Numbered from the stretch's first letter, positions 1 to 21,897 are shown. The stretch: DNA of 64,000 bases from Vitrella brassicaformis CCMP3155 (GCA_001179505.1 CDMY01001000.1:163605-227604); one strand, 5' to 3'. Notes: a model not told the origin generated them from the sequence alone. Translations and numbers: made by a program.

Positions 1-1578
1 AATTCCTCATCACCGAACGGTACGCACCCCCCCCACACACACATGTCCCTCCATCCCTCCGTTGTTTGTGCAGATCGTACCTCGATCCGAGTGACATGCT
101 CAAGACGCTTCCCGTGTTTTACGCCATCGGGCGGCAACAGGACGCCACTGAGGCCGGCAGATACATATTCGAGGCTCTTGGCGGACACGCAAAGGTACCG
201 TTCTCCCCTTTCAGAGGCGTGTTTGGTGGTCGGGTGGTCACCAAGACAAAGTGCAAGGAGTGCGGCAGGATCAGCGAGAGGCCTGAGAAGATATATGACC
301 TCGGACTAGCCGTCCCAACCGAAAAGGCATACAAGAAAATGTCGGAGAAAGGTGATCAGTACACACACACACACACACACACAGATGTACAGCGCAGTCT
401 CCTGTCTCTCTGTCTCTCTGTCTCTCTGTCTCTCTGTTTGTGCGTCTGTGTGGCTGTATTTGTGTGACAAACAGGTCGCAAGCGTCTGTCGGTGCAGAAG
501 TTGTTGGAGGACTGCATGAGAGTGGAGGAAATGAGTGGCAACAACGCCTATGCGTGCAGCAAGTGCCTCAAGAAGCAGCCGGCCACCAAGTGGCTGGAGA
601 TTCTCCACCCGCCCAAACACCTCTTCCTCTGCCTCAACCGCTTTGCCTGGGACAGGACCGACGGCCGCTCGAAGAAGCAGAAGACACCCGTCTTCATCGA
701 CAAGACACTTGTCCTTAATGACGGATTCCTCTACGACCTGTACGCCACCATCATCCACACGGTAAGTGACTGGACACACACAAACACACAGACAGAGTGA
801 GTGCATCGTGTGTGTGATTGTCTGTCTACAGGGGCCGACCTCCACCTCAGGCCACTACTACACGATTGGCCGCCGGTCGGAGGGCAGCGCACAGCGCCAC
901 AACGAGTGGTACTGCTTCGACGACTCGCGAGTCACGCCCGTCCCTCACACCGTCATCGACAAGATCGCTTCGTCCACTGAGAAAGACGACAGGCCATATG
1001 TACTCTTCTACAGGTACGCACACTGCGAAAACACACAGAATGCACCATGGATGGATGTGACGTGACCGGCGCACTGTGCAGATGCCGAACGGCGTCCGTG
1101 TCTCCCGTGCCTGCAATTCCTCGGGGCCTCTACGACAAGGCAAGGGCCAAGGAGGAGGCAGCAATCAAGGAGATGACCGAGGCCGGCCGGCAGCAGCATG
1201 AGAAGGAGAAGCACGACAGGACTGAGGAGGCCAAGAAGGTAAGAGACGCCTTCTGCATCCATGTCGTCTGCGGATGACTGTGTGTGCTTGTGATCTGCAG
1301 CTCCGCCTCTCGCAAGAACAAGCGAGCGACGCCGAGCCTTCTCAAAGCCTCGACAACCCCCACGACATCGAAGACCGCGTGTACGAAGCCGCCATCCGAC
1401 AGGCCATGCGGCGGGAGGCCATGCGGCGAGCGGACGTACCGCATGAGGGGCCGCTGAAGGGCTCGGTGGACTTTACCATCAACTACATGACAAGGGTGAC
1501 TGAGTGGCTGGAGGATGAAGGCATGCATGGTCATCTCTCTCCTTTCTGCGTTCGTGTGTTTGTGTGTTTGTGTATTTC

Positions 1579-1609
<31 letters not shown>

Positions 1610-2129
1610 GCGTTGGATACCCTCCAGCCGGGGCAGAATTTGTATATTGTGGGGTCCATCGAGGAACTTGGGGAGTGGGACCCGGCCCGGGCCGCCCCAA
1701 TGAGGTGGACCCCGGGCCACAACTGGACGTGCTGCCTCGACCTCCCGCAAGGGCGTAAGAGACACAGAAGACCACAGGAAGAGAGAGAGAGAGAGAGAGA
1801 TGTCTCCTCCTGTGCCGCGCCTGTCCATGTTCGTGTATGTGTGTGTGTTTTTTTCCATTTGTGTGTCTGTGCCGTCGATCCAGCCATTGAATACAAGTTT
1901 CTCGTCAAGGAGGGGGACGGGGTGGAGTGGGAGTTTGGGGGGAACCACAAGGTGGGCAGACAAGAGCAAGACGGACCACACACACACATACACAGACACA
2001 TGGAGATTGAGACACGACCTCTTTCGTTGGTGTGTCTTCTTTGGTTGGTGAATGCAATGACTGCAGCTGGATGTCTTGGAGGAGGAAGACACAGAGCTGT
2101 TGGATTGGTGGGGGCAGGGCGGGGGCTGA
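1..2129 (+). CDS. Ubiquitin-specific protease (USP/C19), C-terminal part, fused to a CBM20 starch-binding domain; 5' end lies outside the window
   Basis: Spliced exons give QQDATE, CKECG...PEKIYDLGL, YACSKC, LNRF, His box GPTSTSGHYYT, WYCFDDSRV and YVLFYR. In-frame exons (1301-1495, 1628-1754, 1884-1951) then give VDFTINYMTR-PGQNLYIVGSIEELGEWDPARAAPMRWTPGHNWTCCLDLPQGPIEYKFLVKEGDGVEWEFGGNHK, a CBM20 pattern. The 3' end is uncertain (2129 or about 2523). Confidence 0.88.
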
Positions 2130-3411
2130 GGGAGGAGAGGGGAGGGGAGGGGAGGGGGAGAGGGAGAGGGAGGAGGGCCCCTTCTCGACGCCGTCCGAGG
2201 TCGACCTGACGCTGCTGCCAGCCCGACATCGCGGCACCGGCATACGTGACCCTCTCAACCGAGCCGCGGCCGCATACCCCGCTTCCCACGCGAGCACCAA
2301 GGTGGTCTCCAAGTCCGTCCAAGGCAAGGCTCCGTTCCACCCTCACTCATCCGCCACCCCCTCACCCAGAACAACCAGCAGCAGGACTCCGCCTACAAGC
2401 CAAGAGAGAAGCCGCCCTGCCGCACATCGACCGCCGGCGCCATCGCGTCCTCTCCCGCAGCGCCGCATACAAGACGTCCGGCTGGCTGGCCATCTCTCTC
2501 TCTCTGCTTGTCTTCCTCGCTGACTGACTGACTGACTTTGTGCTTTTCTGTCTTTCTTTGCCTTGTGTTGTCAAGTTAGTGGCTGGCTATAGCTATTCGG
2601 TCTGTGTCTGTCGAGTGGATGCAGCCAGCGTTACACGACTGTTCGGCTGCTCTATGTCTGCCCCCATCTCTCTTGATCTCTCTCTCTGGCTGCCCGATAC
2701 TGTGTGTCTGTCTGTCTGTCTGTCTGTCAGAGTGTGTGTCTATCTGTGTGTGGTCTGTCTTGCCGCGTGGGAGTGTGTGCGTTGCGGTGAATGAATTCCG
2801 ACTGGCTGACTGGCTGGCTTGTGGAAACAAAAGCACTTATCAATACCTCTCTCCCACTCCCCTCGCCTCCCCAAGTCGGCTCAGCCGATTCAGACACTCA
2901 GAGAAAGGTCTTCTGCTGAAAAAGCGTCCCCATTTATCACACACATACACACAAACGTCATACTGACACACAAGGAGGCGCCAAACGACCACAGAATCGA
3001 CACAGGAAGGTTGTCTGCAGTGATGCAGTGATTCACTGAATGTAATGCATTTGTACATCATTGATTGATTGATTCATTGCTTGACTGACAAGCACACACT
3101 CGTGTGACTCGACTGGCGCCACGTCACTGCAGAATGGCAAGGTGATCTCTTCGTTTCATGCAGCCGGCCGATCAAATCCCATTGCAAACTGACTATCGTG
3201 ACACTCATGTGAGAACACAAAACAGTAGCAGTGTGACCATATAGTCACTATGTCCTTCTAACTCGTAAATTCCCTTCCTGTCCGACTCGGCTCTGGGTTG
3301 GTCTCTCGTCCATTTTGAAGAGAGATCTCGGAATCAGTTCTCGCCGCTTTCCAGTCCTCACATATTTCCTGCGTTTTCGCCGCCCATCCCACCACCCACA
3401 CCCACAGCACC

Positions 3412-6195: not shown

Positions 6196-8157
6196 GCGCA
6201 GAGATCCATCTCACATGAGTTGATTGGAGTGCACCTTGGCCGTCCATTCATCCATGCGTGATGCCTGTATGTGCGTGTGTGTGTGTGTGAGTGTGTGCGA
6301 CTGAGTGTCTCTTTTTGCGTGTAGTCCGTTCGTCTGCGCAAAGGGGCCGATGGACGGAGGCAGCGTATTCTGTGCTCCGTGTATATGTGTGTGTGTGCTG
6401 GTTTTCGTCTCAAGTCAGGTCACCCAGGTAGTTCGACCTTATGTAGGTTGCGTGATGTGATACCCTCAGCGAGTGTCGGCAGCTCTGTCTGTCGGTGCCG
6501 AAAAATCCACCTGGTTGGATGTTTTGGCTTTTTGTGCGTTGGCAAGGCGACAGAGATGAAGAGAATCAGATAAATGGACAGACTGAGTGAGTGAGTCTAC
6601 ACATGTGCTGTATTCTTTTCCTCTTGTTCCTTTTGTCTGCTGCCGTGTGTGTTGGTTGGCGTGTCGTTTGGTGAAGCGCCGGCACGTCACACACACTGAT
6701 GGGCCGGTGGCTCATTGAGCAACGTGACAAGTGACGGACACGGGGAAGGAGAGCGATGGCGAGATGATGCATGAGCCGTGTTTGGTCCACACGCTTTGGC
6801 GCGGTGTTTGCTGTCTGCTTTGGTCGTACGTCGCCTTCTGCTGCTTGTACACCGAGGGGCATCCCTTCTCGATGAGCGACCGGCAGACACCGATGTGCGA
6901 CCAAAGCAGACAGACAGCAGTGAGTCTGCTGACATGTGGTTGTTCGTCTGCGCGCGGTGGGTGCCATGGGTCACCGACAAAAACAGTGTATGATTAAACG
7001 ACGGTGTAAGTAACTACATTCACGGTAATCATTCTGTTCAGTCGGCCTCCACACAGACATGCAGCTATGTAGAACATATAGAGGCAGACACATGCAGGGG
7101 GTGAGGGATATGATCGATGAGAAGCCCCTCCCCTCCCCTCTCAAACCGCCACGACAGGACGACAGGCCGACCCACACCGATACAAAAGCCACGCACAGCG
7201 CACAGACTCGTCCACTCAGAGCGCGACACACGCACACAAACATTAACGACATGCGATAGCTCCTTAGCTCAGCACCCGAGGCACAAAGTCAGACAGTGTC
7301 AACGAGGGACGAGCCCCAACTGGAGGCCGCCAGACAGACACCCACTGGATGAGAGTCATGACGATGGCATTAAGCCATCGGTGTCATGCCAGGAGTGAAA
7401 CCGTCGTCATGGCAGCTCAACAAAAAATCGTCAGCAGGGCGTGGGAGAGACATGAAGTCTCTCTCGACCAGCAGCACGGCCCACAGGCAGCAGCACCAGC
7501 ACACTCACGGCAGACAGAAAGGGCCACGGGCGGCAGACAGACACACACGCGACAAAGGCAGCGACAACAGACACACACACACACACAGTGAGAGATAAAC
7601 CATCCCGACAACGGCAGGCACAAAGAGGCCCATCAGTGTGTGTGTGTGTGTCTGTGTGTGTGCTGTCTTCGGCTGCGCAGACGTCCATCAGTCTATTGCA
7701 CAAACACAGCACCCACTCGTGTGTCGCCTCCAGCCAGCGACCAAATGACCGGCCCACCCACAAAAACTTCCGTCCACGAAGGCATCTTTGCGCAGCGATC
7801 ATCAAGGCAGACAGACAGACACGCAAAGTCAGACAGAGAGACAGACACGCAAAGTCAGACAGACATTGAGAGAGAGCAACTCTTCCCTCCTCTGCCGACA
7901 CAGCACGACCAACACCATTCAACACACACACACACAGCGAGAGAGACTGTGAGGCAGCCGCACAGACAAAAGTCACTCGCTCATCCACTCATTGCACACA
8001 GACAGACACACAGACAGACAGACAGCCAACACACACACACACACATCGCTCAACGTCGAGGCACTCAGTCAGACAGTCAACGAGTGAGGAGCCCCCGGCC
8101 ACACACATGAATGAGTGTGGCACACACAGCCGCCCCCCGGTGTGTGTGGACTCTTTC

Positions 8158-8357
8158 CTACTCTATGCTGATCAACCGCAGCTGACGGTAGGGGCACCAA
8201 GAGTCGTCTGGCAGTTTGATTTGTCTGACTTCCCCCTCCCGCATCTCCAGAAACGCCCCACGCTGCCACGCACCCCAATCAGACATACGACCCACCCGCC
8301 CACGGACATCGTATGCTTTGACCCGGCCGTCGAAGTCATCCCGCCACCCAATCCAGT
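8158..8357 (-). pseudogene. 5'-truncated FKBP-like cassette
   Basis: WIGWRDDFDGRVKAYDVRG...MREGEVRQIKLP...YRQLRLISIE*; the N-terminal half is replaced by another repeat. Confidence 0.75.
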
Positions 8358-8498
8358 GTCTGTGTGGCTGAGCACTGAACACTCTCGTGTGTCGCCGCCA
8401 GCCAGCCAACCCGGTAGGATAAAGGCAGAACGGCACACAGACATTCCGAGACGCCCTCCCCTCTCAACGCAGCGCGACAGACATCATGAGAATGAACA

Positions 8499-8534
<36 letters not shown>

Positions 8535-8682
8535 CTGTGGGTGGCCGGCCGAACAACACTCTCACTCCTTTGCTCAAAGCCAGAGCACACAGCCACCAAC
8601 TCAGCCAGGCAGCGAAAAAGGAGCTCTCGGCCACACACACAGCCGTCCCCCCGTGTGTGTGTGTGTGTGTGTGCAGTCTCTC

Positions 8683-8765
8683 CTACTCTATGCTGCTCAA
8701 GCGCAGCTGATTGTAGGGGACAACAAATCCGTCTGGCAGTTTGATTCGCCTCACTTCGCCCTCCC
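8683..8765 (-). pseudogene. C-terminal remnant of an FKBP-like cassette
   Basis: EGEVRRIKLPDGFVVPYNQLRLSSIE* followed by the family 3' flank. Confidence 0.7.
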
Positions 8766-9016
8766 TTCGGCCTGATAAGAATGCGCCCTTCTTTATGTGT
8801 GCCCACACACCCCTGCCCTTGCACACGCTGGACAATTCACGACACATCCACGCATAGAGAGTCATATGGCTGACAAAAATCACAACGCATTTCCTCTTCG
8901 CCACTCAGATCTCAGACACACAGTCAGCCAGACACCGAGTGAAGAGCCCCCGGCCACACGCATGAGTGTGTGACACACACAGCTGCCCACTACTGTGTGT
9001 GTGTGTGCACTCTCTC

Positions 9017-10854
9017 TTACTCTATGCCGATCAACCGCAGCTGACGGTAGGGGGCACCAACGCCTCAGTTTGATTTGCCTGACTTCCCCCTCCCGCATCG
9101 ACAGGATCGCTTCATCCAACCACTCATTCCGAAAATCAGACACACGATACACCAGCCCACGGTTATCGCAGTTTTTTTTCCTGGCCGTCGAATGCATCAT
9201 TCCACCAAATCCAGTCGATCTCGACGGTGTCGTTGTCTGTGGGCACTCTGCCGGTGCCCTCCTGCACCACCTCATATCGATAGCCATACGATGGCGATGT
9301 GCCAGTCCGGCGGCCGACAGTGCTGCGATTGGCCGGCTGCCGCTGTGACGATGAGGAGCCCTCCTGCCGCTGACGGACTGTGGCACCACCACCATTGCCG
9401 CCGCCAGCCGCTGCTGCGCTGCACACAGAGAGCAGACACAACGCCAATCACGAGAGAGAGGTAAGGGCTGCTCACCTCAAGTAGCCTCCCCAGCCAGACG
9501 ATGGCAGTGTGCCGGTCCGAGGCGCCACACTGAGAAGAACGGAACAAAGATGGCCAATTGGTGCATCTGCTGGCCCTGTTGGGCTTTACCTGGCCTGTGG
9601 TGTCGGTGTGTCGGTCTTGGCAATGCCGTACATGGCCGCATTGACGTCAAATGGCGCCTGATCCGTCTCGCTAGCCATCGTCAGCACCGCAGCCATGTCG
9701 GCGGGCGAGGCGCCGAGTCGCTTTCTGCGGTAGTAGTCGACCATGCGGCCGATGTGGTCGGGATCGACCACCTCCACCGCCCGGCTGCTGGACCACCTGA
9801 CGGCACACAAACAGTGAGAAGCACATCAGTGTGTGTCGTTGTGTGTTGGTGTGATGGGCTCACAGGTCAAATCGATTGGCCAGTGCGATGTCGCCCATTT
9901 CGTCCACAGTGGACTGAGTGGTCGAGGTGAGCTGTCCGCACACCTCGACCGACCGAATGGCATCGCCGCCACTCAGAGGCAGCAGAAAGGGCTCGACGGC
10001 CTGACACACACAGCCACAACCATCAGACCAACAGACATTTCCCTCTCTCTCTGCTCATAATCATGTCGTCACCTGAATCTCTTTGTCGAGATTGTCGCGT
10101 CGTGTGTTGGCGGCCCGCAGCTGCCGCTCTAGCCGGGCCTTTTCCTTGGCAAAGGCTTTGACGATGGCCTCCATCGCCTTGAGGGCGGCGGCCGCCTCGG
10201 TGCGGCTGTTAGTCAGCGACCCGGTGGGCACTCCATCGGCGCGTGAAGAATCAGCGGCATCCTTGTCGAGAGGCGTCATCATCAGTTTGACCCAGAAGCC
10301 ATGGCGACCTGCAACAGACACACCACACAGGCAGCCAAAGGAAGAATGACGACACAAGGAGACTGTGTCATCGCCTTCATTGCCCTCACCCTTGTCGCGC
10401 TTGGCCACTTCATCGAGCAGATGGCCGACCGACGCCGCCTTGCCGGCGCTGCGAAGGGTCTCCGCATTGAGGATGGCCTTGTGGACGGCCTTGAAGCCTC
10501 CGGGCAGATGTCGACGAACACCCGCTGGCTGTCGTCTTTGACGAGTCGGCCCTCCCAGCAGCCCCCGAAGAGGGCCGCCAGTAGAGTGCCCTCCACTCCC
10601 TCTCCCTGAGTCACGTGCTGCCGCCTGACGCTCATCAGATGGCCGCCCACATTCAGCAGCAAAGTGTCGTCAGGGGAGGCCGCCGAGGGGTCCGATGCGC
10701 CGTGCTGCTGCCTCTCTCGCTGGGCGTCCTCGTCAGCCTGGCGGATCTGTGTGTGCAGCTGGCTGATGGCGTCACCGATGGCCGTCACGGGCACGTGCAG
10801 CTCATTGAGAATCGCATGGGCGCTGAACCGCCGAGCGGCCAACTCGCCCTCCAT
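9017..10854 (-). pseudogene. BTB/POZ-BTB-FKBP-like gene copy with frameshifts
   Basis: DDTLLLNVGGHLMSVRR...RVFVDICP (KCTD-type BTB). Relative to the paralog at 32298-33949 there is a 1-nt deletion near 10497. The FKBP exon (9418-9017) has an extra base in an A-run near 9175 and a second shift near 9050. Confidence 0.75.
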
Positions 10855-11419
10855 CCACAGGGCAACAGATCTCTCTCAGAGGCAGTGCCTGAACCACACA
10901 GACAGACACAGACAGACAGACAGACCGATGTGAACGGATCTGCGCGTTTTTTGATTGCCATCGGTTCGCTTGTCCCACCTGAGGCTCTCCAAGGCGAAAG
11001 GACGTGCCGTCACCGTCTTCAAGTTGCGAGACTCTTCTTCGCGATCGGATTCTCTGCAGGAATACCGCTATTCGTTGCATCATTTGGCGCTTCGAGGACG
11101 TCCGGTGGGAGTGAGGAGAAGTAAGGGATCGAGGAAAAATTCAGATCATTCATCCCACCTTGTGTGGTCTGCGTGTGTGTCCTTCAAGGCGAGAGGCGGT
11201 CTCTCTGTGCGCGTGTGCGTGTGATGTGTGTGCCCGTGTGTTCGCCAAGCGGATTGGCGGCTCTTGGCAAACTTGAAGGCATCAGGTGAGTCACTCTCCC
11301 GACCCGTGATGGATGTGTTGTGCAGTTCCAAACTATCGGCAACAGATGCAGTTATGCCACGTGTTATGCCAGGCCGCCTGTGGCTTGGAGAAACGACGGC
11401 TTCCTTCTTGCCAGCTTCG

Positions 11420-11648
11420 CACCGAAGAGAGAAGGGAAGAGGGGTGAGCTCAGGGCCGAAGGGCGCGTCGATAGTGAGCTGCGTGGGCTGTTTGACCGAC
11501 ATAGGAAGTCGTTTTGGCAGATCACTCATCGGCCTCAACACAGTAGAGGTGAGCACCGCCGAAATGAAAGAGAAGATCTGATGCGACGCGATGCGTCACT
11601 GTGGATGGGCGGCGGCATGTCATGTGTGTGTGTGGGTGTAGGAGGGCC
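11420..11648 (+). repeat. Shared 5' leader exon and intron of module-FKBP genes (other copies about 34170-34392, 38590-38798, 42030-42250)
   Basis: Near-identical text gtgagctg...ttggcagatcactcatc...cagtagag|gtgagc...agaagatctgatgcga...ag|gagggccATGagtga in four places. Confidence 0.8.
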
Positions 11649-12040
11649 ATGAGTGACCACCGTGGTGTCGGACTGCTGGACGGCCATTTCGTCTATGAGG
11701 ACGGCAGTGACGGCTACGAAATGGACGTCAAGGGGCAGCGGGTGGCCATCAAGCCTTCGTTCCATTCGCACATCAAATTCTGCTTCGAACACCACGACGA
11801 GAGAGCGGCTGAGCCACACACAGGTGTGCTGCAGCCTGCCTTGTTGCCCTTTTGTGTGTCAGGCCATCTGGCGCTTCCAAGCGCCGCCGTCAGGACCAGC
11901 ACAACGGGCCACCACCACCACCAGCAGTAGCAGCGGCAGGCATTCCTGACGGCTTCAGTGTGTCGCCATCTGGTGTGCGATATCGCATCTTCGTTCTCGG
12001 CACCGGCAGGATGCCAACTTTAGCCGACCAGACCATATAC
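11649..12040 (+). pseudogene. Unknown ~50-aa module plus N-terminal half of a divergent FKBP-like domain
   Basis: MSDHRGVGLLDGHFVYEDGSDGYEMDVKGQRVAIKPSFHSHIKFCFEHH, then IPDGFSVSPSGVRYRIFVLGTGRMPTLADQ. The usual splice donor is lost and I could not find the rest of the domain (a gap is nearby). Confidence 0.55.
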
Positions 12041-12333
12041 GTGGGTTTGTGTGTCGTGTGTGTGCGTGAATGCGAGAGCTGCGTGGGAAATGAGAGAGAG
12101 ACAACACGATATCCCTAGCTGCCTTGCTGTTTCGTGTGTGCCCTCGTTTGCTGTTTATGTATGAACATTGATCGCCCTCCGGAGCCAGTGCATTCAGCTG
12201 GGCCGGTCAGCCAGGTCACTCAATCAATCAAGCTAACCACCACGTACGTACGTCCCTTCTGATCTGTGATGTGAGAGGTAGACGGAGAACAGTGTGTGTG
12301 TGCACGTGTGTGGGGGGAAGGGGGGGGGGGGGG

Positions 12334-12633
12334 NNNNNNNNNNNNNNNNNNNNNNNNNNNNNNNNNNNNNNNNNNNNNNNNNNNNNNNNNNNNNNNNNNN
12401 NNNNNNNNNNNNNNNNNNNNNNNNNNNNNNNNNNNNNNNNNNNNNNNNNNNNNNNNNNNNNNNNNNNNNNNNNNNNNNNNNNNNNNNNNNNNNNNNNNNN
12501 NNNNNNNNNNNNNNNNNNNNNNNNNNNNNNNNNNNNNNNNNNNNNNNNNNNNNNNNNNNNNNNNNNNNNNNNNNNNNNNNNNNNNNNNNNNNNNNNNNNN
12601 NNNNNNNNNNNNNNNNNNNNNNNNNNNNNNNNN
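12334..12633. other. Assembly gap (300 N) flanked by poly-G on both sides
   Basis: Visible N run. Confidence 0.99.
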
Positions 12634-13076
12634 GGGGGGGGGGGGGGTGTGCACACATGGATGAGCTCACTGGCATGAATTAGGGCCACTTGTTGTGTTC
12701 ACTGGACTGCTATCACTCGCGATGCGAGCCATCGGTTGGTGATGGGACACCTGAGACACGTTACACACTGAAGTCAACGGAACTACGCGACATGCTCTCT
12801 CTCAAGGCGGTCAATCAGATAGCTGCTCGTCTGTCAGAAATGTCAACTTTCGGCCCTCAAGAGATGGAATAAATCCTGAAAGAGTGCCATGTCCTGGCTG
12901 CATGCGCATGGGGGCAAGACCGGATGTCTTGAAGGTGGCCCCCCGTCTGCATGCAGGACGCGCCCTTCCACGCCGCTGCTATTCACCGCGTCTCTTCATT
13001 CCGTCGCATTCCATCCCAATTGTTCCATCCGAGTCAATGATGGCCCCATTTGAGCGTGACTGATAAGTTGTTCACC

Positions 13077-15655
13077 ATGCAGCGCCTGTCCGTCCTTCTC
13101 CTCTTGACAGCGTCATCGGCCGCTTCCCTCTTGGCCCACGACATGGCCTCCTCCGCTGAGATGAGCAATCATCTTGAGCAGTCGGGGCTCGGCGTGCACC
13201 CCGCAATCCTCCACAGACCGGCCCACAATGCCGCGGCCAAGGACGTCCTGCACCTGCTCGCCACTCACAGACAGGCATCAGCAGCATCAGCAGCAACACC
13301 GGACAGAAACGAAACGGCCGTCTCCATGCTGGCCATGCGGCACCCAGGAAGCCATGTCATTGACCTACCGTCTCGGCACAGAAAGGAGAGTAAGGGCCGA
13401 GACGGTAGGAGACACACACACACGGTTGGTTGTCGAGCTGTCGGTCGCGTTAGAGTCTGGAGTTGCGTGTGTGTCTGTCTGTGTCGGTGCAGCCACCAGC
13501 AAGATTGAGACGGGAAGTGAGAGCCAGCGAGCCATCCCCCAGCTGGGCAAAGGTATGTTTGTCATGGCGACGATGCAGTGAGCACAGTGCCGTGATGGCC
13601 TGTCTCGCTCAGATGAGGACCTCCTTGTCGGCTTGTCGGAGGACAACTCGGCCGCCGACGCCCACCACCACCCATCACTCATCGAGAGAAATACAAGTGA
13701 GCCACTTGGCTTCCCTCGTCCCCTTCTCTAGCGGTGCAGCACATTGCTGTCTTTGCCCTTCTCGGCGGTCGCCGCCCTTGTCGTGTGTCATCATGCAGCC
13801 GACATCCATGGGCCTGGTGTTCCTCCCGAGATTCCGAGACAAATGGAGGTGAAGATGGAGGCAATACGGACGCTCACGAAGGGGCAGATCAAGACCGTCA
13901 AAGGCCTCTGCGAGACCGCCTGGATCCATTGCAGTGTGATGCGCAGCCACGTCGTTTCAAAGCCCAAATCTGTGCTGCGCAAAAAGAAGAAGGTAACTAA
14001 GATGGCCACACGCGCAGACTCAGTCCACATGCCCCAGAGAGAGAAGCTCTATATGTATGCGTTGCTGCAGGCGCAGAAGTGGAAAGAAGTGCCCAGTGCG
14101 AAAGGCTTCTGGAATCGGAGGGAGTGTCGCTCCTCGAGGGGTTTGTGGCAACAGGAGACAGCTTTGCCAATTTTCCTCCGTTACCCTCTCCTGTGCAGCC
14201 TTGACGAAGGAGGGAACTTCGGGCCCGGATCAAATTTCAAAATCATGTGAGCAAGGAGATGATGTGCAGGCGTGTGCACCGCGTGTCGGCGGGCAGGTTC
14301 AAAAAGGGCGGCTTTGGCTTGGTGCTCTTCGCAGAGATTGACAGAGGCACGTGGGCATGGACACGCGTGTGCATACTACGGGTCTGTCTGTATCGTTTCT
14401 GTGTGTATGGCTGTGTGTGTGGATTGATGGCATGCAGAGATGCTGATTTCGCCGACGGACAATGTGCCAGGTACCCATGTGCCCACGGCCAATGCTGTGA
14501 GTCGCTATTCATATTCGTGACGGTGTACGTTTTGTTCACATATACGGATGAAGCGAGTGAAAGAGAAAGTGGCATTTTGCGCGTCGTAATCATGCCGCGG
14601 AGTGACTACGAGTCCCAGTTGTACGACGATTCCGATAGGAATGCGCCAACCGAAAACCTCCTGAAGGAGTTAGAAAGTGCGCCAGCTATCGAGATGATGC
14701 AACACACATTGGCATCCGCTAGGGTGTGTGTATGTGTGTGCGTGTGTCTGTGCAGATTACGCGGCCATCTGGGAAGAGATATCATCAGGAGCCATCTCTG
14801 CCGAGAAAATGCCGCAGATTCCTAAGTATTACCTGCCGAAGGAGGAGCTGACAGGTCGGTATGCGCAGACTCATCCACACCCGCACATCGAAGCAAACAG
14901 AGCCTCTGTTGTTTCTCTATCGTGCATACAAACAGCGCTCATCATAGGGCGTCTTCGCGGCATCGAAGTGAAAGACCTACTTTACGTTGACACGAAAGAC
15001 CTGCTTTACGGCCACATTCGACGCGACATCCCGTGGCACCAGGTGGTGCCTGTGCGCCTCAACGGCGAGAGAAAAGACCTGACATTGGGTGCCTTCATAG
15101 TGGCACTCTTGGCTGTGGGAATTTATGGTAAACAACATGCGTGAATCGATGGAGTCCGCGCCAGTCTTACGTCTTCAGGCCTCAACAGAAATGCGGGCCA
15201 TCGACACCAAGACATTGACCATGGTATGGATATATGCGTGAAGCCAGGTGCAAGTGGGACCTCTCTCAGTGAGTGGGTCTCTCTCTATGTGTGTGTGTGT
15301 ATGTGTGGGGGTGTGTCTTCTCAACAACCTGCAGCTGATCGATCTCAGCTCTATGCGCAAGATCCCGTCCGGCAAGACCTATGGTCTTAAGGACATGTCG
15401 GGCGTCAAGACGTGCGCCATGCATACCGCAACACATGACCACAAATGTGTGCAGGTGTACCATTCACTCATTTCATCCATTTGATGCTTGTGCAGGATCG
15501 CCGGGGAGATTGTGGAGCAGCTCCTCAAGAAACAGCCGAAGAACAAGAGCCTCCAAGAGCTGGACAGCCTCCTTGGTTTGAGATCCTTTTCGCTGGACTT
15601 TTTCCAACGGGTGATTGATTTGGCCCTCGGCAGCGCCAACCAACCAGTCGGCTGA
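13077..15655 (+). CDS. Multi-exon putative secreted protein of unknown function
   Basis: Signal-like MQRLSVLLLLTASSAASLLA followed by about a dozen GT-AG exons with protein-like content (e.g. DYAAIWEEISSG, LRGIEVKDLLYVD). It could be more than one gene. Confidence 0.55.
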
Positions 15656-16679
15656 CATGCAGCTGGGATATCTGCCTGTCTGCCCAGTACCAGTCCCCCA
15701 ACAGCAAAAGCGACAAACTACCATTTGCAGACGACACCATGCCGTAGTGCGACTCGCATGGGATGAGAGGACCAGTTGAAGGGAAGATGTACAGGCAGTG
15801 CGTGTGGAAAGCTCAAAGTGAATGCATCAGCTTTGATCTCTCATGGCGGGAGCAGTTTGGGGGAGGGACAGGGAGAGGGAGAGATCAAGGTGATTCGGCC
15901 AGCCAAGCGGCCGAGTCAGCAGGCCTGCTGTCCCTGGAGATGATGCACATCTTTTGATGTCAAGTCCATCTTCGGGATGTTTTGCCTTATCGAGCTCGAG
16001 TGATATGCCTCCGTCCCACTCTACATCTGTCGAGATCGATATCGGTCGCCGGGCAGACACCGACGGCCGACAGAATTGCAAAGGCACACATACAAGAAGG
16101 AACGAGCCCATCATCCACCGTCAGCAGTGCATTCCCCGTCGCTGCATTCATTGATTGATTGACTCCTCGGCCCTCTGTTGCACTCGTCTGTCCACCCATT
16201 CACACGCATTTCGGCCCTCGGCGATGAGTTCGATCCTGCATGCTTGCGAGATTAGCTCGCAGACAAAAGGGGGCTTCCATTCCCTTTTTTTGGGATAAGT
16301 GAGCGAACAATGAGCACATGGGCGTCCACCGACGACAGAAATGAATCGCTTTCCCTGCGTGTGTGTCATTTGTGCAGACAGTGCTCGTCAGATATCTCAC
16401 CGCATTCATTGCCGTCAGATAGACAAAGGCGTTGGAAAGACCTGAGGGCGACAGACAGACAAACAGCCTCACACACAAACAAATACGGGCAGGCGCTTGT
16501 GTTGTGTGTTGATGTGATGGGTGAGCAGGTTCGTGTGGATTGGTGGCCTTGTCCCCGACCGCATCAACAGCGCCTCTCCTCTCTGTCGCCCTCAGATGGG
16601 AGGTGGGCAGCACACCACACTTGACGAGCTGTATATGTGTGTGTGTGTATGGATCCCAGGGTCCCAATCAGCCCGTTTG

Positions 16680-17779
16680 TTGAGTGCTTCCACTGGCGAT
16701 GATGATGCATCGCGGTGTGTGGTGTGCATCCATGAGTACGACACACACACGGGTGCCGCACACACGCCCCTCGTACTCGGCCAATGCGGTACGTACGGGG
16801 GCAAGGATGGTTGGCCGAGACACACACATAGTTTTGCGTATTCCATCGCATCCATGTGTGTGTCTTGTGTTGTGTTGGTGTGTGAAGGTCACACCTTCTG
16901 TGCCCACGTGAGCCGGCAGACAGACAGACAGACAGACAGACAGACTGCAGCGAGAATGTCTTTGTTCTTCATGACGTGTTGGTTTGTTTCATTCAGTGTG
17001 TAGCGCGCATAAAAGGACTCGACGGCAGCGTCAAGTGTCCCACGTGCAGGTGAGTGGGCATGTGTGAAGGTCATGAGCAATCCTGACCCATTCATCTCTC
17101 CCTCTCTCTCTCCCTCTCTCTGTTTCTCAGGGCTGTAAGTCGGGAGGATGTCATCAAGAAGAACAACGCACTCGTCACCCTCCTCGAGTACATGCGGCCA
17201 TCTGACGGCACCGCTGGACGGCAGCAGCAGGCCGGTAATGCGACCACCACCACCACCACCGCAGCAGCAGCAGCAGCAGGGCACGTCAGCAGCAGGGTCG
17301 CCACCACACCACATGGAGCACGGCAGACCAGCAGGTAAGGCTCGCCAGAGAGCAGAGGAGCACTGAACACAGTTGATCTCGCCATCTGTCCTTTTTGTTC
17401 GTACAGCAATGGCGCCACACTCCGTCAGCGGCAGGAGGGCTCCTCACTGTCACAGCAGCAGCCGGCCAACAGCAGCAGTGTCGGCCGTCGGACGGGCACA
17501 TCGCGGTATGGCTACCGATATGAGGTGGTGCAGGAGGGCACCGGCAGAGTGCCCACACTTTTCGACACCGTCAAGATCGACCGGATTGCGTGGGATGATG
17601 GATTCGACGGCCAGCGCAAAGCATGCGATGTCCATGGGGAGGTGATTCGGGTGTCTGGTCGGGGTGAGTGGAAGCGTGAGGCGTTGCTGGCGATGCGTGA
17701 GGGCGAGATTAGGCGAATCACAGCGCCACCCAGATATCCTGCCCGCTTCCGTCAGCTGCGGTTGATCAGCATAGAGTAG
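16680..17779 (+). CDS. RING-HC finger fused to an FKBP-like domain
   Basis: Exons CVVCIHEYD...PLVLGQC|GHTFCAH|CVARIKGLDGSVKCPTCR|AVSREDVIKKNNALVTLLEYM...; a phase-2 intron joins these to FKBP exon 17407-17779. The start codon is uncertain. Confidence 0.75.
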
Positions 17780-18965
17780 GAGAGACTGCACACACACGTG
17801 TGGGCGGCTGTGTGTGTCACACACTCATGTGTGTGGCCGGGGGCTCTGCCCTCTGTCCCTGTCTGACTGTGTCCCTCGGGTGTCGAGTAAAGGAAGGAAC
17901 GCGTCGTTGATGTTTGTGTGCCGTGGCCCAGTCTGTGTGCTGTGTGTGGCTCTTTCTTTCGGTGATAGCTGTATCAGGTGTGTAGGTTTGGGAGGGGCTT
18001 CTCGCCAGTCCCTGTATCGACTCCCAACATGTCCCTGTGTCGACTTCTCATCATGTCCCTGGAGCTTCTGCCTTCATTCTAACTGCATGTCCGTTAGTGG
18101 CTTATCAGCGGACCGAATGAGTTATGAATCACCCATGGAAATGAACCAACAGACAAGCATGAAACTCGCCACACGCCTGACTGAGGAGAAGGTGCAAGCA
18201 TGTCTCATCGGGGGGCGGGTGAGTGAGTGACACACTGCAGTGTGTCATGGTCCCAACGGATGATTCATTGGATGCTCATTGACACATTGGGTCGGTCCGG
18301 CGCACACATGCATGCAAACATCCCCCACTCACACCGACAGCAACACCTCACATCCGACACGAACAACCACATGTTTGCAGACTCACTGCGTTCTCTCCCA
18401 TTTCGTGCTGTCTGTCTGTCTGCTTTGGTCGCCCGTCGGTGTCTGCCGATCGCTCATCGAGAAGGGATGCCTCTCCATGGACAGACGGCAGACACCGCCC
18501 TGAGACGAGAGCATACACCAAGACACACGAAACAGACACAACGCGATTGATGTATGTATCATCTCATAGCCGCTTTCTTCCCTCCCCGTGTCTGTCATTC
18601 GTGTGCCCCCATATGTGCAGGGCAGCAGATCGACGACGAGTCACCGGCCCATCAGTGTGTGTGACGTGCCGGCATTTCATCGAACGACGCGCCACCCGAC
18701 ACACACGGCAGCAGAAAAGGGGCAGAGAGAGCATACCACACGATACATAGTCGGAAGGGAAGGAAAATATGTTTGTGTGTATATGTACAGATCTGGCTGA
18801 CTGCATACGAATACCTACATAGGTGGACATATACATATACATATACACTAGCCGCCCCGTGCACCACACTCAGACACAGGTCGAGATGATATGGCCGCCC
18901 ACCCGCGGGCCGCCCACCAAGTCAGGCAGTCAGTCAGTCAGTCAGGCAGTCAGCCAGGCCGTTAG

Positions 18966-20246
18966 TCAGTTGATGTGCATGCCGGTGAGTGAGGCCACCA
19001 GGTGGCTCAGCGGGTCGCGCGCAGCCCGGGGAATCCGCAGCACATTGTCGCCACGCAGTGACAGCTCCTGTGTGGCGCACACTGACAGACTAACACGGTA
19101 CCTGCACACACACACACACACACACGCACACACACACATGGTGTGTTGGTTCATCTGTGTGTGACCCCCCATTCCCCCTCCCACCGTGTGACGTCCGATT
19201 TGTTGAGTTGTGTGTGTGGCGGCAGGACCTCCTTCACCCTGCCCTCCAGGCCGTTGATCTCCGGCCGACGGACCACACCGCACAACCACACATCATCGCC
19301 AACTCCAACCGAACCAGACCTGGTCACACACAGAGAGAGCGGAAGTTGTGATGGCTGACAGACAAGCGGCTGCATATTCTCTCTGATTCAGTGACGCACT
19401 GACTCACTCACTCGGTATTGTCGTCTTTGCCTTTGGTGAGCTTTCTGACGTGCCCCTGGCACACGGCCATCCTGGCTAGGTGCAGTCGGAGTATTGCTCT
19501 GTCCTGCTCGGCCGGCCCAAACCACTTGAAGGCCTCCATGTTCTCCTCGACCTTCGCCCCCCTCTCTGCCCCAATGATGACGGCCGCCCACTTGGCGGCC
19601 AGCTCACGGCGGCCCGTAATGAGGCCATGGCGACTGAAGAAGAGGCCGTGGTGGGCCGTCATCAGACAGTCGGCATACGACTGGCCCAGGGAGTCGTCTT
19701 CGAGGGCCGTGGCGTAGTAGTAGCTGGCCAGCCATGTGGCTGCCGTGCCGTCGGAGTGCCTGACGGCCACCTCACGCAACGGGCCGCCCAGCTCATCGGC
19801 CACCGGAGCGGCAGACAACGACGAGCCAGAGGGCTTCTGGATGCGCTCAATGACACAGCAATTGTCCTGCAGACAGACAGACAGACAGACAGACAAACAC
19901 TCCACTCAGAGAGTATCTCAATCTGTCTCACCTGTCGGCACGTGGGGCACCTGAAGAGGACCATCTGCTCACCCCGGGCGCCCGTCGGCCGCGACGCAGA
20001 ATCGGCGAAAAACGCCTTGGCCTCGCCACTCAGACACTGCAGTGCCGGCAGTCAGCAAACATACAAACACAAGTGCATCCCTTCCTGCCTGCCTCTCTGT
20101 CTGCCTGCACTCACCTCAAAGCAGAAAAAGTGGTCGCATCTGAGCCTCGCGAGATCGGTCTTGCCTGCAAGTGCCTCATGGCAGATGACACACTGGGCAT
20201 CTTTGGGTGGCATGACATAGCGCCGCGGGAGGACGTAGGCAGCCAT
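18966..20246 (-). CDS. RING finger protein with a C-terminal SH3-like (PEING) module
   Basis: CVICHEALAGKTDLARLRCDHFFCFE|C...CPTCR. Phase-2 splices at 19412 and about 19190 continue in frame to VGDDVWLCGVVRRPEINGLEGRVKEV...RYRVSL...ELSLRGDNVL. Confidence 0.75.
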
Positions 20247-20500
20247 GGGATGCCTTCCTCCTTCCGACGTATGAGTTATCTATGCCCCAACCCAACTCTG
20301 GTGGTCTATGCGTCACACACCAGCTGCACATGCACACACACGGCCAACAATACCTATGAATGCATTGTGCGCATTTCTCTCCACTGCACGTCCTGGCGAC
20401 CATTTGCGAGCTTGAAATCCCCTAGGGCACACGGTGAAACCGCCATCTTGCGTGAGATCTGAGGCTTGTTTCTGTTTCCTTTCTCGTCCTTTTCCCTTCA

Positions 20501-21490
20501 ATGAGTCGGCAGTTGTCAGTTCCCCATGTGGTGCAGCGGTTCTTCAATCCTGCTCTCTCCTCCTCCACCACGGAGGAGGACGATGACACAGTCACCAACG
20601 AGATGGTTCAGGGGGTGCTGGCGGACCACCAGGACACCAAGCAGCAGCTCCTCGCCACACAGAAGCAGCTGATTGACGAGCTGACGAGAGAGAGGGACGA
20701 TTGGAAGAGGCGCTGTGAACGTGCCGAGGCGAAGCTGACCGAGTTCCAGGCACGTTGCGGCTACTTTGGGGCTCATCAGGATAGTGTGCTGACTGTACTG
20801 AGCGCGAGAGATCACGCGCAGCTGATCGAGTGGCTCGGCGGCGACAGGACGCTCGTCCAGCTATACAAGTAAGGCACACCAGCACCGCGATGTCCAGGCG
20901 GTGTTTCTTCATCAACCGTTCTCTCCCTTTGTGTGTGTACTTGTTTCTTTCTCAGGGCCACGCGTGATGGTGGGATGTATGGGAGCCTGCTGGACAGAGT
21001 GGGCGGTGCGCGTGGCCTCCTGTTCATCATCCGCGTCGGGTCACTTCGATTCGGTGCCTATATGAGCGGAGGCATCGACGTGCCCGACACCAATCGCCCT
21101 TGCGACGTATGGTTCTTTTCCCTCACTGGCCATGATTTCAGCGGCCCCACAAAGATCCCTTTGCGGCACAAAAACAATCAGATGGTCAGTATCGCCGCTA
21201 GGGATGGAGCACTCGAGAGCAGAACCGGTGAAAACAAGGCCAGAATGTGCATTGGTGGTGGGGGGATTCTGTGGCTGGGGTATGGCGATAATGATGCCCC
21301 TGCTGCGGACATTCGAAGGATTCAACACTGGGTGCACAAGGATGATGTGCCAGCGGGTTATACAGGGATGCGGGCTGCCGTCGCTGAGATATCGAGCTCC
21401 CAATGCGGCTTCCTGGGCAGCAACGAGCTCTTCACTGCTGAAGAGCTGGAAGTGTGGCATGTGGTTAGACTACATTTTGAGAGTGAATAG
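20501..21490 (+). CDS. Coiled-coil + TLDc domain protein
   Basis: Two exons (20501-20868, 20956-21490) joining LIEWLGGDRTLVQLYK-ATRDG...GLLFIIRVGSLRFGAYM...WFFSL...AEELEVWHV, a TLDc signature. Confidence 0.85.
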
Positions 21491-21897
21491 GCTTGTTTCT
21501 CTCTGCGTGCATCGGTCCGCGTTCGTCTGAGTGCTTCTGCACTGTGTCAGTTTTGTTATTTATACCGTGACGTGTTGACAGTGACGAGATTACCATGAAG
21601 CTGCATACATGTGTGCGGCATGACCATAGAAAGGCAGACTCTCCTGTGTGTGTGTGTAAGTGTGCGATTTCTCGTGGATCATGGATCTGTGCGATTCATC
21701 CTTAGCCGACCAATAATACACAGGCATGTCTCACAACCAAGGGGCTCTCCCCGAAACCGCTGCCTTGAGGGGCAGCCGATAGGTGAGCGAACGAGAAGCG
21801 CATTGTGGAGCAGATCCCAAGGCCACATCGTCCCCACCGACGCTCCCGTTCGTGTGGCGTGTGTGGAGCAGATCTCGGCTGTGTGCATGAGAGTCTC

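What the first reader, a model, noticed from the sequence alone, without database searches (positions are those of the whole stretch)
474..2129. Deubiquitinase fused to a CBM20 starch-binding domain
Seen: continuous in-frame splicing from the USP His box through a helical linker (EDRVYEAAIRQAMRRE, loosely UIM-like) into a CBM20 with conserved Trp residues (LGEWD, MRW, NW, VEW). Known: CBM20 targets laforin and STBD1 to glycogen, laforin works with the E3 ligase malin, and apicomplexan relatives store amylopectin. Inference: a granule-localised DUB regulating storage-polysaccharide enzymes or glycophagy. I do not recall this architecture being characterised.
Basis: partly seen in the sequence, partly recalled or inferred. 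Interest (0 to 1): 0.75.

Follow-up and report, generated by a model that had tools for sequence, protein, structure and literature searches.

The report
Starch-tethered deubiquitinase gene in Vitrella
The alga Vitrella brassicaformis has one real, transcribed gene that joins a ubiquitin-removing enzyme to a starch-binding module, which makes it a candidate for ubiquitin control on the surface of starch granules; its function has not been tested.

Summary
Window 3-2129 (+) holds the last nine exons of a gene cut off by the window start. All introns are GT..AG. My spliced model equals residues 442-898 of the public protein CEM38811.1 / A0A0G4H4U3 (Vitrella brassicaformis, 898 aa).

Pfam finds a full USP domain (residues 382-695, 114.6 bits) with intact Cys box, His box and Asp. 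It also finds a C-terminal CBM20 (803-886, 67.3 bits) with all five site-1 glucan-contact residues.

A spliced 2666-nt contig in run X6 crosses the disputed 1238|1301 junction and runs from the 5' end of the gene into the first CBM20-only exon. The linker and the first CBM20 strand share one exon, so this is a single transcript.

Upstream of the window there is a probable CBM48/AMPK-beta-like module, but its Pfam score is below threshold.

No other USP+CBM20 protein turned up. The nearest USP relatives (36-41% identity) lack the tail. No paper that I found describes this architecture.

Best reading: a cytosolic deubiquitinase tethered to Vitrella's cytosolic starch. Whether it acts on granule proteins or on ubiquitin esterified to glucan is untested.

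The scan also noted this gene from an overlapping window (s1-231078). Its notes of CBM20-bearing E3 ligases elsewhere in this genome were not tested here.

The parts
3..1011 (+). C-terminal two thirds of the USP (peptidase C19) catalytic domain, residues 442-695 of the 898-aa protein. Coding exons are 3-19, 74-351, 475-761 and 832-1013. It includes the QQDA motif and two CxxC pairs of the zinc ribbon.
   Evidence: Pfam UCH covers 382-695 of P0001 at 114.6 bits, the full profile 1-254.
832..924 (+). His box and catalytic residues: His643 at 853-855 and Asp666 at 922-924.
   Evidence: Coordinates were mapped. The His aligns to the catalytic-box His of USP36 (8bs9).
1012..1462 (+). Charged, Ala/Glu/Arg/Lys-rich linker of 107 aa (residues 696-802). 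It is encoded by the end of exon 832-1013, exon 1082-1238 and most of exon 1301-1495.
   Evidence: Composition is. Pfam found no significant family. The 1238|1301 junction is present in the spliced contig of run X6.
1463..2090 (+). CBM20 starch-binding domain (residues 803-886), split over exons 1301-1495 (first strand), 1628-1754, 1884-1951 and 2067-2129. Site-1 residues: W830 (1676-1678), K860 (1895-1897), W871 (1928-1930), E872, N876 (1943-1945).
   Evidence: Pfam CBM_20 67.3 bits on P0001. The Atlas model of 802-898 matches CBM20 clusters at TM 0.84-0.89.
2127..2129 (+). Stop codon TGA.
   Evidence: It matches the C-terminus of P0001.
1239..1300 (+). The 62-nt GT..AG intron whose removal joins the USP/linker exon to the linker/CBM20 exon.
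   Evidence: read laying joint 1236->1299 (cut +2), skips 62, GT..AG. It is in contig record 23 of X6 with 158 letters on the shorter side.

Best explanation
This is the 3' part of a single, expressed nuclear gene of Vitrella brassicaformis (CEM38811.1, 898 aa). The protein has no signal peptide. In order it carries a sub-threshold IQ-like motif, a probable CBM48/AMPK-beta-type glucan-binding module, a Ser/Thr-rich spacer, a complete USP-class deubiquitinase domain with an intact catalytic triad and zinc ribbon, a 107-aa charged linker, and a C-terminal CBM20 with a complete site-1 glucan-binding pocket.

The most likely mechanism is tethering. The CBM20, probably helped by the N-terminal module, holds the enzyme on the cytosolic starch granules of this alga. 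The two long flexible spacers let the USP domain sweep the granule surface and remove ubiquitin from whatever carries it there.

I rank granule-bound proteins of starch metabolism or turnover as the likeliest substrates. Ubiquitin esterified to the glucan itself is the less likely but more novel substrate.

Shown here: the gene structure, transcription as one unit, domain identity, and conservation of catalytic and binding residues. Inferred: starch binding, localisation, enzyme activity and substrate.
For: Gene model and frame. The model is identical to residues 442-898 of the public protein. The organism and record are given.

Transcript: X6 contig record 23 (2666 nt) joins 73-349|473-760|831-1010|1079-1236|1299-1494. 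It extends 1523 nt upstream of window position 73, enough to cover the whole N-terminal coding region. The X6 depth of 28.7 (of 68.4) in bin 1601-1700 fits about 42 further nt in exon 1628-1754. X1, from another study, holds the 349|473 junction.

Domains: UCH 114.6 bits and CBM_20 67.3 bits. The Cys box, His box and Asp align with USP36 and USP35.

CBM20 site 1: W830, K860, W871, E872 and N876 align with CGTase W616, K651, W662, E663 and N667 (the roles of these residues come from the established CGTase and glucoamylase literature).

N-terminal module: AMPK1_CBM E 3.9e-4. Language-model scores are 0.95-0.96 and TM is about 0.5 to AMPK1_CBM/CBM48 clusters.

Biology: Vitrella starch lies in the host cytosol (bioRxiv 10.64898/2026.09.25.754361), so a cytosolic ubiquitin enzyme can reach it. 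CBM20 is fused to non-hydrolase regulators in the related Toxoplasma (PMC11414933) and to phosphatases, a formin and PP2C among the CBM20 hits.
Against: No binding, localisation or activity data exist. Only one species carries the fusion in everything I searched, so there is no conservation to show that the combination is under selection. The N-terminal module is below Pfam's gathering score (21 vs 26.8 bits), and my single-sequence AF2 model of it was unusable (pLDDT 33). CBM20 site 2 is shortened relative to CGTase and could not be judged. The junctions 1754|1884 and 1951|2067 rest on frame, GT..AG sites, Pfam continuity and the public model, not on a transcript contig. CBM20-like domains also occur in proteins with no known link to starch, for example RNF213 (PMC12203941).
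Confidence: 0.6

Rival explanations
1. It is a glucan-directed ubiquitin esterase, an 'eraser'. The two glucan-binding modules place the USP domain on alpha-glucan chains so that it cleaves ubiquitin ester-linked to glucose hydroxyls. That would reverse a HOIL-1-like glucan ubiquitination and control granule turnover or clearance.
For: HOIL-1 ubiquitinates glycogen and unbranched glucosaccharides on the C6-OH, and no dedicated DUB for this mark is known (PMC12203941). The deubiquitinases for this mark are named as an open question in PMC13345935. Most DUBs tested show both esterase and isopeptidase activity (PMC7848729 abstract). A catalytic domain bracketed by glucan-binding modules is the layout of enzymes that act on the glucan itself, such as laforin and SEX4 (established knowledge). 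An earlier scan note reports an RBR ligase with a CBM20 tail 33.6 kb upstream (s1-231181), but I did not test it.
Against: There is no evidence that glucans are ubiquitinated in any alveolate. The long flexible linkers suggest tethering rather than precise positioning of a glucan chain in the active site. The putative writer was not verified here. I did not look for any USP feature that would mark esterase preference.
Confidence: 0.2
2. It is a glucan-sensing DUB. The CBMs act as an AMPK-beta-like storage-carbon sensor, and glucan binding (perhaps with Ca2+/calmodulin at the IQ-like motif) switches the activity of the USP domain toward substrates that need not sit on the granule.
For: The N-terminal module resembles the AMPK-beta glycogen-binding domain. 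There is an IQ-like motif at residues 129-145 (Pfam IQ, E 0.023). Glycogen sensing by the AMPK-beta CBM is established knowledge.
Against: Both the AMPK1_CBM and IQ matches are below threshold. There is no sign of an autoinhibitory contact. The simple tethering model explains the same features.
Confidence: 0.12
3. It is an annotation or assembly artefact. On this view two neighbouring genes, a USP and a small CBM20 protein starting at the in-frame ATG at 1274, were wrongly merged.
For: An ATG at 1274, inside the 62-nt intron, is in frame with exon 1301-1495. The last two junctions lack direct transcript support.
Against: A spliced contig removes exactly 1239-1300 and runs on through exon 1301-1495. 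That exon encodes both the linker and the first CBM20 strand. Genomic contigs from two DNA runs, labelled as different organisms and from different studies, match the assembly without gaps across 446-1546. There is no room for a terminator and a promoter.
Confidence: 0.03

Closest known systems
Human USP35/USP38 and USP36 catalytic domains (PDB 5txk, 8bs9)
   Same: They share the USP fold, with aligned Cys box, QQDA motif, CxxC zinc-ribbon pairs, His box and Asp. These were the best solved-structure matches, at 91.8 and 76.7 bits.
   Different: The similarity is family-level only, not orthology. None of them carries a carbohydrate-binding module. The flanking regions are unrelated.
Marine metatranscriptome USPs P0151/P0152 and loci L003-L008
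   Same: They are the closest relatives of the catalytic domain, at 36-41% identity, and they share the same C-terminal ending motif.
   Different: Where the sequence runs far enough (P0151, P0152), the protein ends about 20-30 residues after the USP domain. None has a linker or CBM20, although L003, L005 and L006 have only about 20-200 nt left to judge. Their N-terminal halves are unrelated to the Vitrella protein.
Laforin (CBM20 + dual-specificity phosphatase) and plant SEX4 (phosphatase + CBM48)
   Same: A signalling-type catalytic domain is fused to a starch/glycogen-binding module and works on cytosolic or plastid glucan granules. DSPc+CBM20 proteins are among the nearest CBM20 hits. Laforin occurs in starch-storing protists (PMC2064834, listed).
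   Different: The catalytic chemistry differs: a thiol protease acting on ubiquitin versus a phosphatase acting on glucan phosphate. Here the modules are separated from the catalytic domain by long flexible spacers.
HOIL-1 (RBCK1) / LUBAC and the malin-laforin system
   Same: They are ubiquitin machinery acting at glycogen. HOIL-1 esterifies ubiquitin onto glucans (PMC12203941, PMC13345935).
   Different: They are ligases (writers), not DUBs, and HOIL-1 has no CBM20. No dedicated glucan-directed DUB has been described.
STBD1 and RNF213
   Same: Both carry a CBM20 on non-amylolytic proteins tied to autophagy or ubiquitin. STBD1 is the glycophagy receptor (PMC11406230, listed). RNF213 is an E3 with an N-terminal CBM20 (PMC12203941).
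   Different: Neither has deubiquitinase activity. The role of the RNF213 CBM20 is unclear.

Membership tests
USP deubiquitinases (peptidase C19, Pfam UCH PF00443) | Full-length match to the family profile above the curated cut-off | tested here: met
   114.6 bits against a cut-off of 23.9, profile 1-254/254, residues 382-695.
USP deubiquitinases (peptidase C19, Pfam UCH PF00443) | Catalytic Cys in the Cys box | tested here: met
   C391 in the GSMCY motif aligns with the NTCF Cys of USP36. It lies upstream of the window and was seen in P0001 and L001.
USP deubiquitinases (peptidase C19, Pfam UCH PF00443) | Catalytic His (His box) and the Asp/Asn that follows | tested here: met
   H643 (window 853-855) and D666 (922-924) align to USP35 and USP36.
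USP deubiquitinases (peptidase C19, Pfam UCH PF00443) | Hydrolysis of ubiquitin conjugates | not testable with these tools
   Needs a Ub-AMC/Ub-rhodamine assay or a di-ubiquitin panel.
CBM20 starch-binding domain (Pfam PF00686) | Profile match above the curated cut-off | tested here: met
   67.3 bits against 23.3, profile 3-92/97 on the spliced protein. Exon 1628-1753 alone gives 37.9 bits.
CBM20 starch-binding domain (Pfam PF00686) | Binding site 1: two Trp plus Lys, Glu and Asn | tested here: met
   W830, K860, W871, E872 and N876 align with CGTase W616, K651, W662, E663 and N667. The residue roles come from the literature, not from a test here.
CBM20 starch-binding domain (Pfam PF00686) | Binding site 2 aromatic residue (CGTase Y633) | tested here: inconclusive
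   By my hand comparison with the CGTase sequence recalled from memory (one search does not print this stretch), the loop between the two aligned blocks is about three residues shorter than in CGTase. W840 or W846 might substitute. No alignment covers it.
CBM20 starch-binding domain (Pfam PF00686) | Beta-sandwich fold | tested here: met
   The Atlas model of residues 802-898 matches CBM20 clusters at TM 0.84-0.89. Both sides are predicted models.
CBM48 / AMPK-beta glycogen-binding domain (PF16561), N-terminal module outside the window | Profile match above the curated cut-off | tested here: not met
   21 bits against 26.8, E 3.9e-4, residues 170-244. I therefore call it 'CBM48-like, probable' rather than a member.
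CBM48 / AMPK-beta glycogen-binding domain (PF16561), N-terminal module outside the window | Fold and feature similarity | tested here: inconclusive
   Language-model hits score 0.95-0.96 to AMPK1_CBM clusters and TM is about 0.5. My own AF2 model had pLDDT 33.
UIM (ubiquitin-interacting motif) in the linker | Match to the UIM profile or consensus, including the conserved Ser | tested here: not met
   Pfam gave no UIM hit on residues 690-810 at E<=10. Read by eye, the position of the conserved Ser holds Gln/Ala.
IQ calmodulin-binding motif (PF00612) | Profile match above the cut-off | tested here: not met
   14.9 bits against 20.3, E 0.023, residues 129-145. This is a lead only.

The most novel reading that the evidence does not exclude
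The protein is a dedicated eraser of glucan ubiquitination. It would be a USP that its CBM48-like and CBM20 modules dock onto starch so that it hydrolyses ubiquitin esterified to glucose units. It would work opposite CBM20-bearing E3 ligases of the same genome, such as the reported but untested RBR-CBM20 gene 33.6 kb upstream. That would mean ubiquitin marking of storage polysaccharide is ancient and has its own writer-eraser pair outside animals.
Probability: 0.2. Interest if true: 0.9.

Novelty: new variant of a known kind. Interest (0 to 1): 0.62.

Why it matters
Ubiquitination of glycogen has only recently been shown in cells, and reviews state that no deubiquitinase dedicated to it is known (PMC13345935, PMC12203941). 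A natural protein that joins a complete USP domain to glucan-binding modules, in an organism whose starch lies in the cytosol, is a ready-made candidate for testing. The test would show whether ubiquitin signalling acts directly at, or on, storage polysaccharide granules outside animals. Even under the conservative reading, a DUB for granule-bound proteins, it would be the first described deubiquitinase targeted by a carbohydrate-binding module. It would also add a ubiquitin layer to starch regulation in the lineage that includes Toxoplasma, where amylopectin turnover matters for chronic infection. The limits are that only one species carries it in everything searched, and that there is no functional data.

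Tried and rejected
1. A word-index homolog search with the unspliced open frame 1301-1951 found nothing, because its length window excludes the 898-aa protein. The exhaustive search then found the protein.

2. A single-sequence AlphaFold2 model of the N-terminal module (residues 120-290) reached only pLDDT 33 and was not used for fold search. A PDB sequence search of the same piece gave only chance hits.

3. The UIM-like reading of the linker is rejected.

4. I looked for USP+CBM20 in other organisms. Only P0001 has it among 16 USP hits. None of the top 150 CBM20 hits has a USP domain. None of 64 multidomain CBM20 proteins shows UCH among the 25 of 42 families that the output listed. No Atlas cluster has both. 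Nine metagenome loci with related USPs show no CBM20 downstream. These searches are not exhaustive: only 150 of 382 CBM20 hits were listed, and I could not run an InterPro architecture query.

5. The fetched locus L001 reaches only 11.9 kb upstream. Walking further needs the exact spliced product of an intron-containing neighbour, which has no reference and would have to be typed, so I left the step out. No Cys-rich RBR-like protein is among the 166 proteins fetched.

6. Motif searches failed to pinpoint the one CBM20 protein with a UQ_con hit.

7. The repeat downstream of the gene (2187-2500) has no Rfam, tRNA or Pfam match.

8. The odd 'joints' in X2 and X4 (48->773, 796->1856, 2538->2803) have 20-24-letter sides in CA/TG-rich sequence, and I treat them as low-complexity artefacts.

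Full report
WHAT IS IN THE SEQUENCE

The window starts inside a + strand gene. Reading the DNA and assembling exons by frame and splice signals gives nine exons: 3-19 (partial), 74-351, 475-761, 832-1013, 1082-1238, 1301-1495, 1628-1754, 1884-1951 and 2067-2129. The stop codon TGA is at 2127-2129.

All eight introns are GT..AG and 54-132 nt long. Several are rich in CA/TG/CT microsatellites. The spliced frame is open for 457 residues.

Pfam run on single exons by reference gave UCH at 35.3 bits on 832-1011. It gave CBM_20 at 37.9 bits on 1628-1753 and 49.7 bits on the unspliced open frame 1301-1951.

IDENTITY

The word-index search with the unspliced frame found nothing, because of its length window. 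I then used the one exhaustive search. The top hit, P0001, is 898 aa and 99% identical in three stretches.

P0001 is CEM38811.1 / UniProt A0A0G4H4U3, 'unnamed protein product' / 'Ubiquitin carboxyl-terminal hydrolase', from Vitrella brassicaformis CCMP3155. It is encoded on contig CDMY01001000.1 of GCA_001179505.1. The window begins at position 11945 of locus L001, and the gene occupies L001 10001-14073.

My independently built model equals residues 442-898 of P0001 exactly.

ONE TRANSCRIPT OR TWO

Read laying shows that runs X2 and X4 hold unspliced genomic contigs covering 446-1546. Run X6 holds a 2666-nt contig (record 23) laid as 73-349 | 473-760 | 831-1010 | 1079-1236 | 1299-1494.

Three of its joints are listed explicitly as GT..AG skips of 70, 68 and 62 nt, with sides of at least 158 letters.

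The contig continues 1523 nt upstream of window position 73. That is enough for the 1341 nt that encode residues 1-447 plus about 180 nt of leader. It also has 44 further letters beyond 1494. The X6 depth in bin 1601-1700 is 28.7, which is 42% of the contig's 68.4. This is what about 42 nt of exon 1628-1754 would give. I infer from the depth that the contig also crosses 1495|1628, but that joint is not listed.

Run X1, from another study, holds a 293-nt contig joining 349|473.

Exon 1301-1495 encodes residues 749-813, and the CBM20 match starts at residue 803. The linker and the first CBM20 strand are therefore in one exon, and that exon is spliced to the USP exons. The two-gene artefact is effectively excluded.

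The last two junctions (1754|1884, 1951|2067) rest on the frame, the canonical splice sites and the public model. They are also supported by the fact that only the spliced product gives a contiguous CBM20 match: 67.3 bits over profile positions 3-92, against 49.7 bits unspliced.

DOMAINS

Pfam on P0001 gives UCH at 382-695 (114.6 bits, whole profile) and CBM_20 at 803-886 (67.3 bits).

Against solved structures, the USP domain is nearest USP35 (5txk, 91.8 bits) and USP36 (8bs9, 76.7 bits). In those alignments the Cys-box Cys (C391), the QQDA motif, both CxxC pairs of the zinc ribbon, the His-box His (H643) and the following Asp (D666) are all in place. It looks like an active enzyme, not a pseudo-DUB.

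The CBM20 aligns to domain E of Bacillus circulans CGTase. W830, K860, W871, E872 and N876 sit opposite W616, K651, W662, E663 and N667. Those are the maltose-binding site 1 residues according to the established CGTase literature. Site 2 could not be judged because the loop is shorter.

The ESM Atlas model of residues 802-898 matches CBM20 clusters at TM 0.84-0.89.

The 107-residue linker is rich in Ala, Glu, Arg and Lys and matches no Pfam family. In particular there is no UIM hit.

OUTSIDE THE WINDOW

An earlier scan note (s1-231078) described the same gene as bracketed by two glucan-binding modules and IQ motifs. I tested this in part.

Residues 170-244 match AMPK1_CBM at E 3.9e-4, but at 21 bits this is below the gathering score of 26.8. 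Residues 129-145 match IQ at E 0.023. Atlas language-model neighbours of 155-275 are AMPK1_CBM/CBM48 clusters (0.95-0.96), with structural TM of about 0.5. My own single-sequence AF2 model was useless (pLDDT 33).

I call this module 'probable CBM48-like', not a member of the family.

The N-terminus is hydrophilic and has no signal-peptide-like stretch (read). This fits a cytosolic protein.

HOW COMMON IS THE ARCHITECTURE

- Among 16 USP relatives found with residues 380-898, only P0001 carries PF00686.
- None of the 150 best CBM20 hits has a USP domain.
- Sixty-four multidomain CBM20 hits carry amylase, GH77, GH15, DSPc, FH2, SAP, PP2C and, once, UQ_con. UCH is not among the 25 of 42 families that the output listed.
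- No Atlas cluster of 50 or more members combines the two domains.
- The closest USP relatives are P0151 and P0152, at 36% identity. The P0151 ORF lies wholly inside its contig, and both proteins end about 20-30 residues after the USP domain. Their N-termini are unrelated to the Vitrella protein.
- Nine metagenome loci with related USPs (30-47% identity) show no CBM20 downstream. L004, L007 and L008 have 0.6-1.7 kb of downstream sequence and L009 about 0.4 kb; L003, L005 and L006 have too little downstream to judge.

The tail therefore looks like a lineage-specific addition. The limits are that only 150 of 382 CBM20 hits were listed, the word search is insensitive, and I could not query InterPro architectures.

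LITERATURE

No paper in the held library links a USP or DUB with CBM20 or another starch-binding module. The only paper that holds both 'Vitrella' and 'CBM20' never mentions ubiquitin. That preprint reports that Vitrella starch is made in the host cytosol, around the pyrenoid.

HOIL-1 esterifies ubiquitin onto glycogen and unbranched glucans. A 2025 review states that DUBs for most non-protein substrates are unknown (PMC12203941). The 2026 Nature paper lists the deubiquitinases as an open component and uses USP10 and USP21 catalytic domains in cleavage assays on Ub-maltoheptaose and Ub-glycogen (PMC13345935). I did not see the outcome stated in the text I read. Most DUBs tested have both esterase and isopeptidase activity (PMC7848729).

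MECHANISM

Shown: one expressed gene encodes an apparently active USP with a CBM20 that has a complete site 1.

Inferred: the CBM20, and probably the CBM48-like module, tether the enzyme to cytosolic starch. The two long spacers let the catalytic domain reach ubiquitin on the granule surface.

I put about 0.6 on granule tethering as the function. Within it, protein substrates are roughly twice as likely as Ub-glucan esters. The eraser reading (0.2) is the most novel one that my evidence does not exclude. A glucan-sensing switch (0.12) and an annotation artefact (0.03) are the other rivals.

LEADS FROM THE SCAN THAT I DID NOT TEST

The scan's notes report an RBR ligase with a CBM20 tail 33.6 kb upstream (s1-231181). 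They also report RING+CBM20 and F-box+CBM20 genes elsewhere in this genome (s1-231085, s1-205621, s1-221736). If these are real they would strengthen the idea of a granule-directed ubiquitin system.

I could not reach the RBR locus. L001 stops 11.9 kb upstream of the window, and walking further needs an exact spliced neighbour protein. That protein has no reference and would have to be typed, so the step was left out.

VERDICT

The gene model is already public with an automatic name, but the architecture appears undescribed and, in these searches, unique. I class it as a new variant of a known kind, with interest 0.62.

Noticed in passing
window 2187-2500: The stretch just after the gene's stop codon has summed contig depth 100-400 times that of the flanks in the DNA runs (X2: 6,600-21,700 against about 55). 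Many contigs there are 90-95% alike and share the same variant letters. This points to a high-copy dispersed repeat family. It has no Rfam, tRNA or Pfam match and no second full copy in this window.
   Followed up: partly
window 1496-1627 and 1755-1883: The two introns inside the CBM20 coding region are 132 and 129 nt, both multiples of three, and have no in-frame stop, so frame 1274-2209 stays open for 311 codons. If retained they would insert 44 and 43 residues into the CBM20 without breaking the frame. This may be chance in TG/CA-rich sequence.
   Followed up: no
window 3412 onward (L001 15356-16803): The next + strand gene starts with a signal-peptide-like hydrophobic N-terminus. Its 258-aa product has no Pfam family on record.
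   Followed up: no
alignment A1 (CBM20 hits): Among 64 multidomain CBM20 proteins from many organisms, one matches UQ_con (ubiquitin-conjugating enzyme, E 3.4e-19). It would be another fusion of a ubiquitin-system domain with CBM20. Four carry a formin FH2 domain and one carries PP2C. I could not identify the UQ_con member by motif search, and it seems to lack the HPN...C active-site motif.
   Followed up: partly
L001 9224-9766 (- strand), 235 nt upstream of the gene start: A single-exon GNAT acetyltransferase gene lies head-to-head with the deubiquitinase gene.
   Followed up: no
P0151, P0152; loci L002-L006: The closest USP relatives come from marine metatranscriptome or metagenome contigs. 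P0151 and P0152 share with each other, but not with Vitrella, a conserved N-terminal region of about 500 residues that has no Pfam family.
   Followed up: partly
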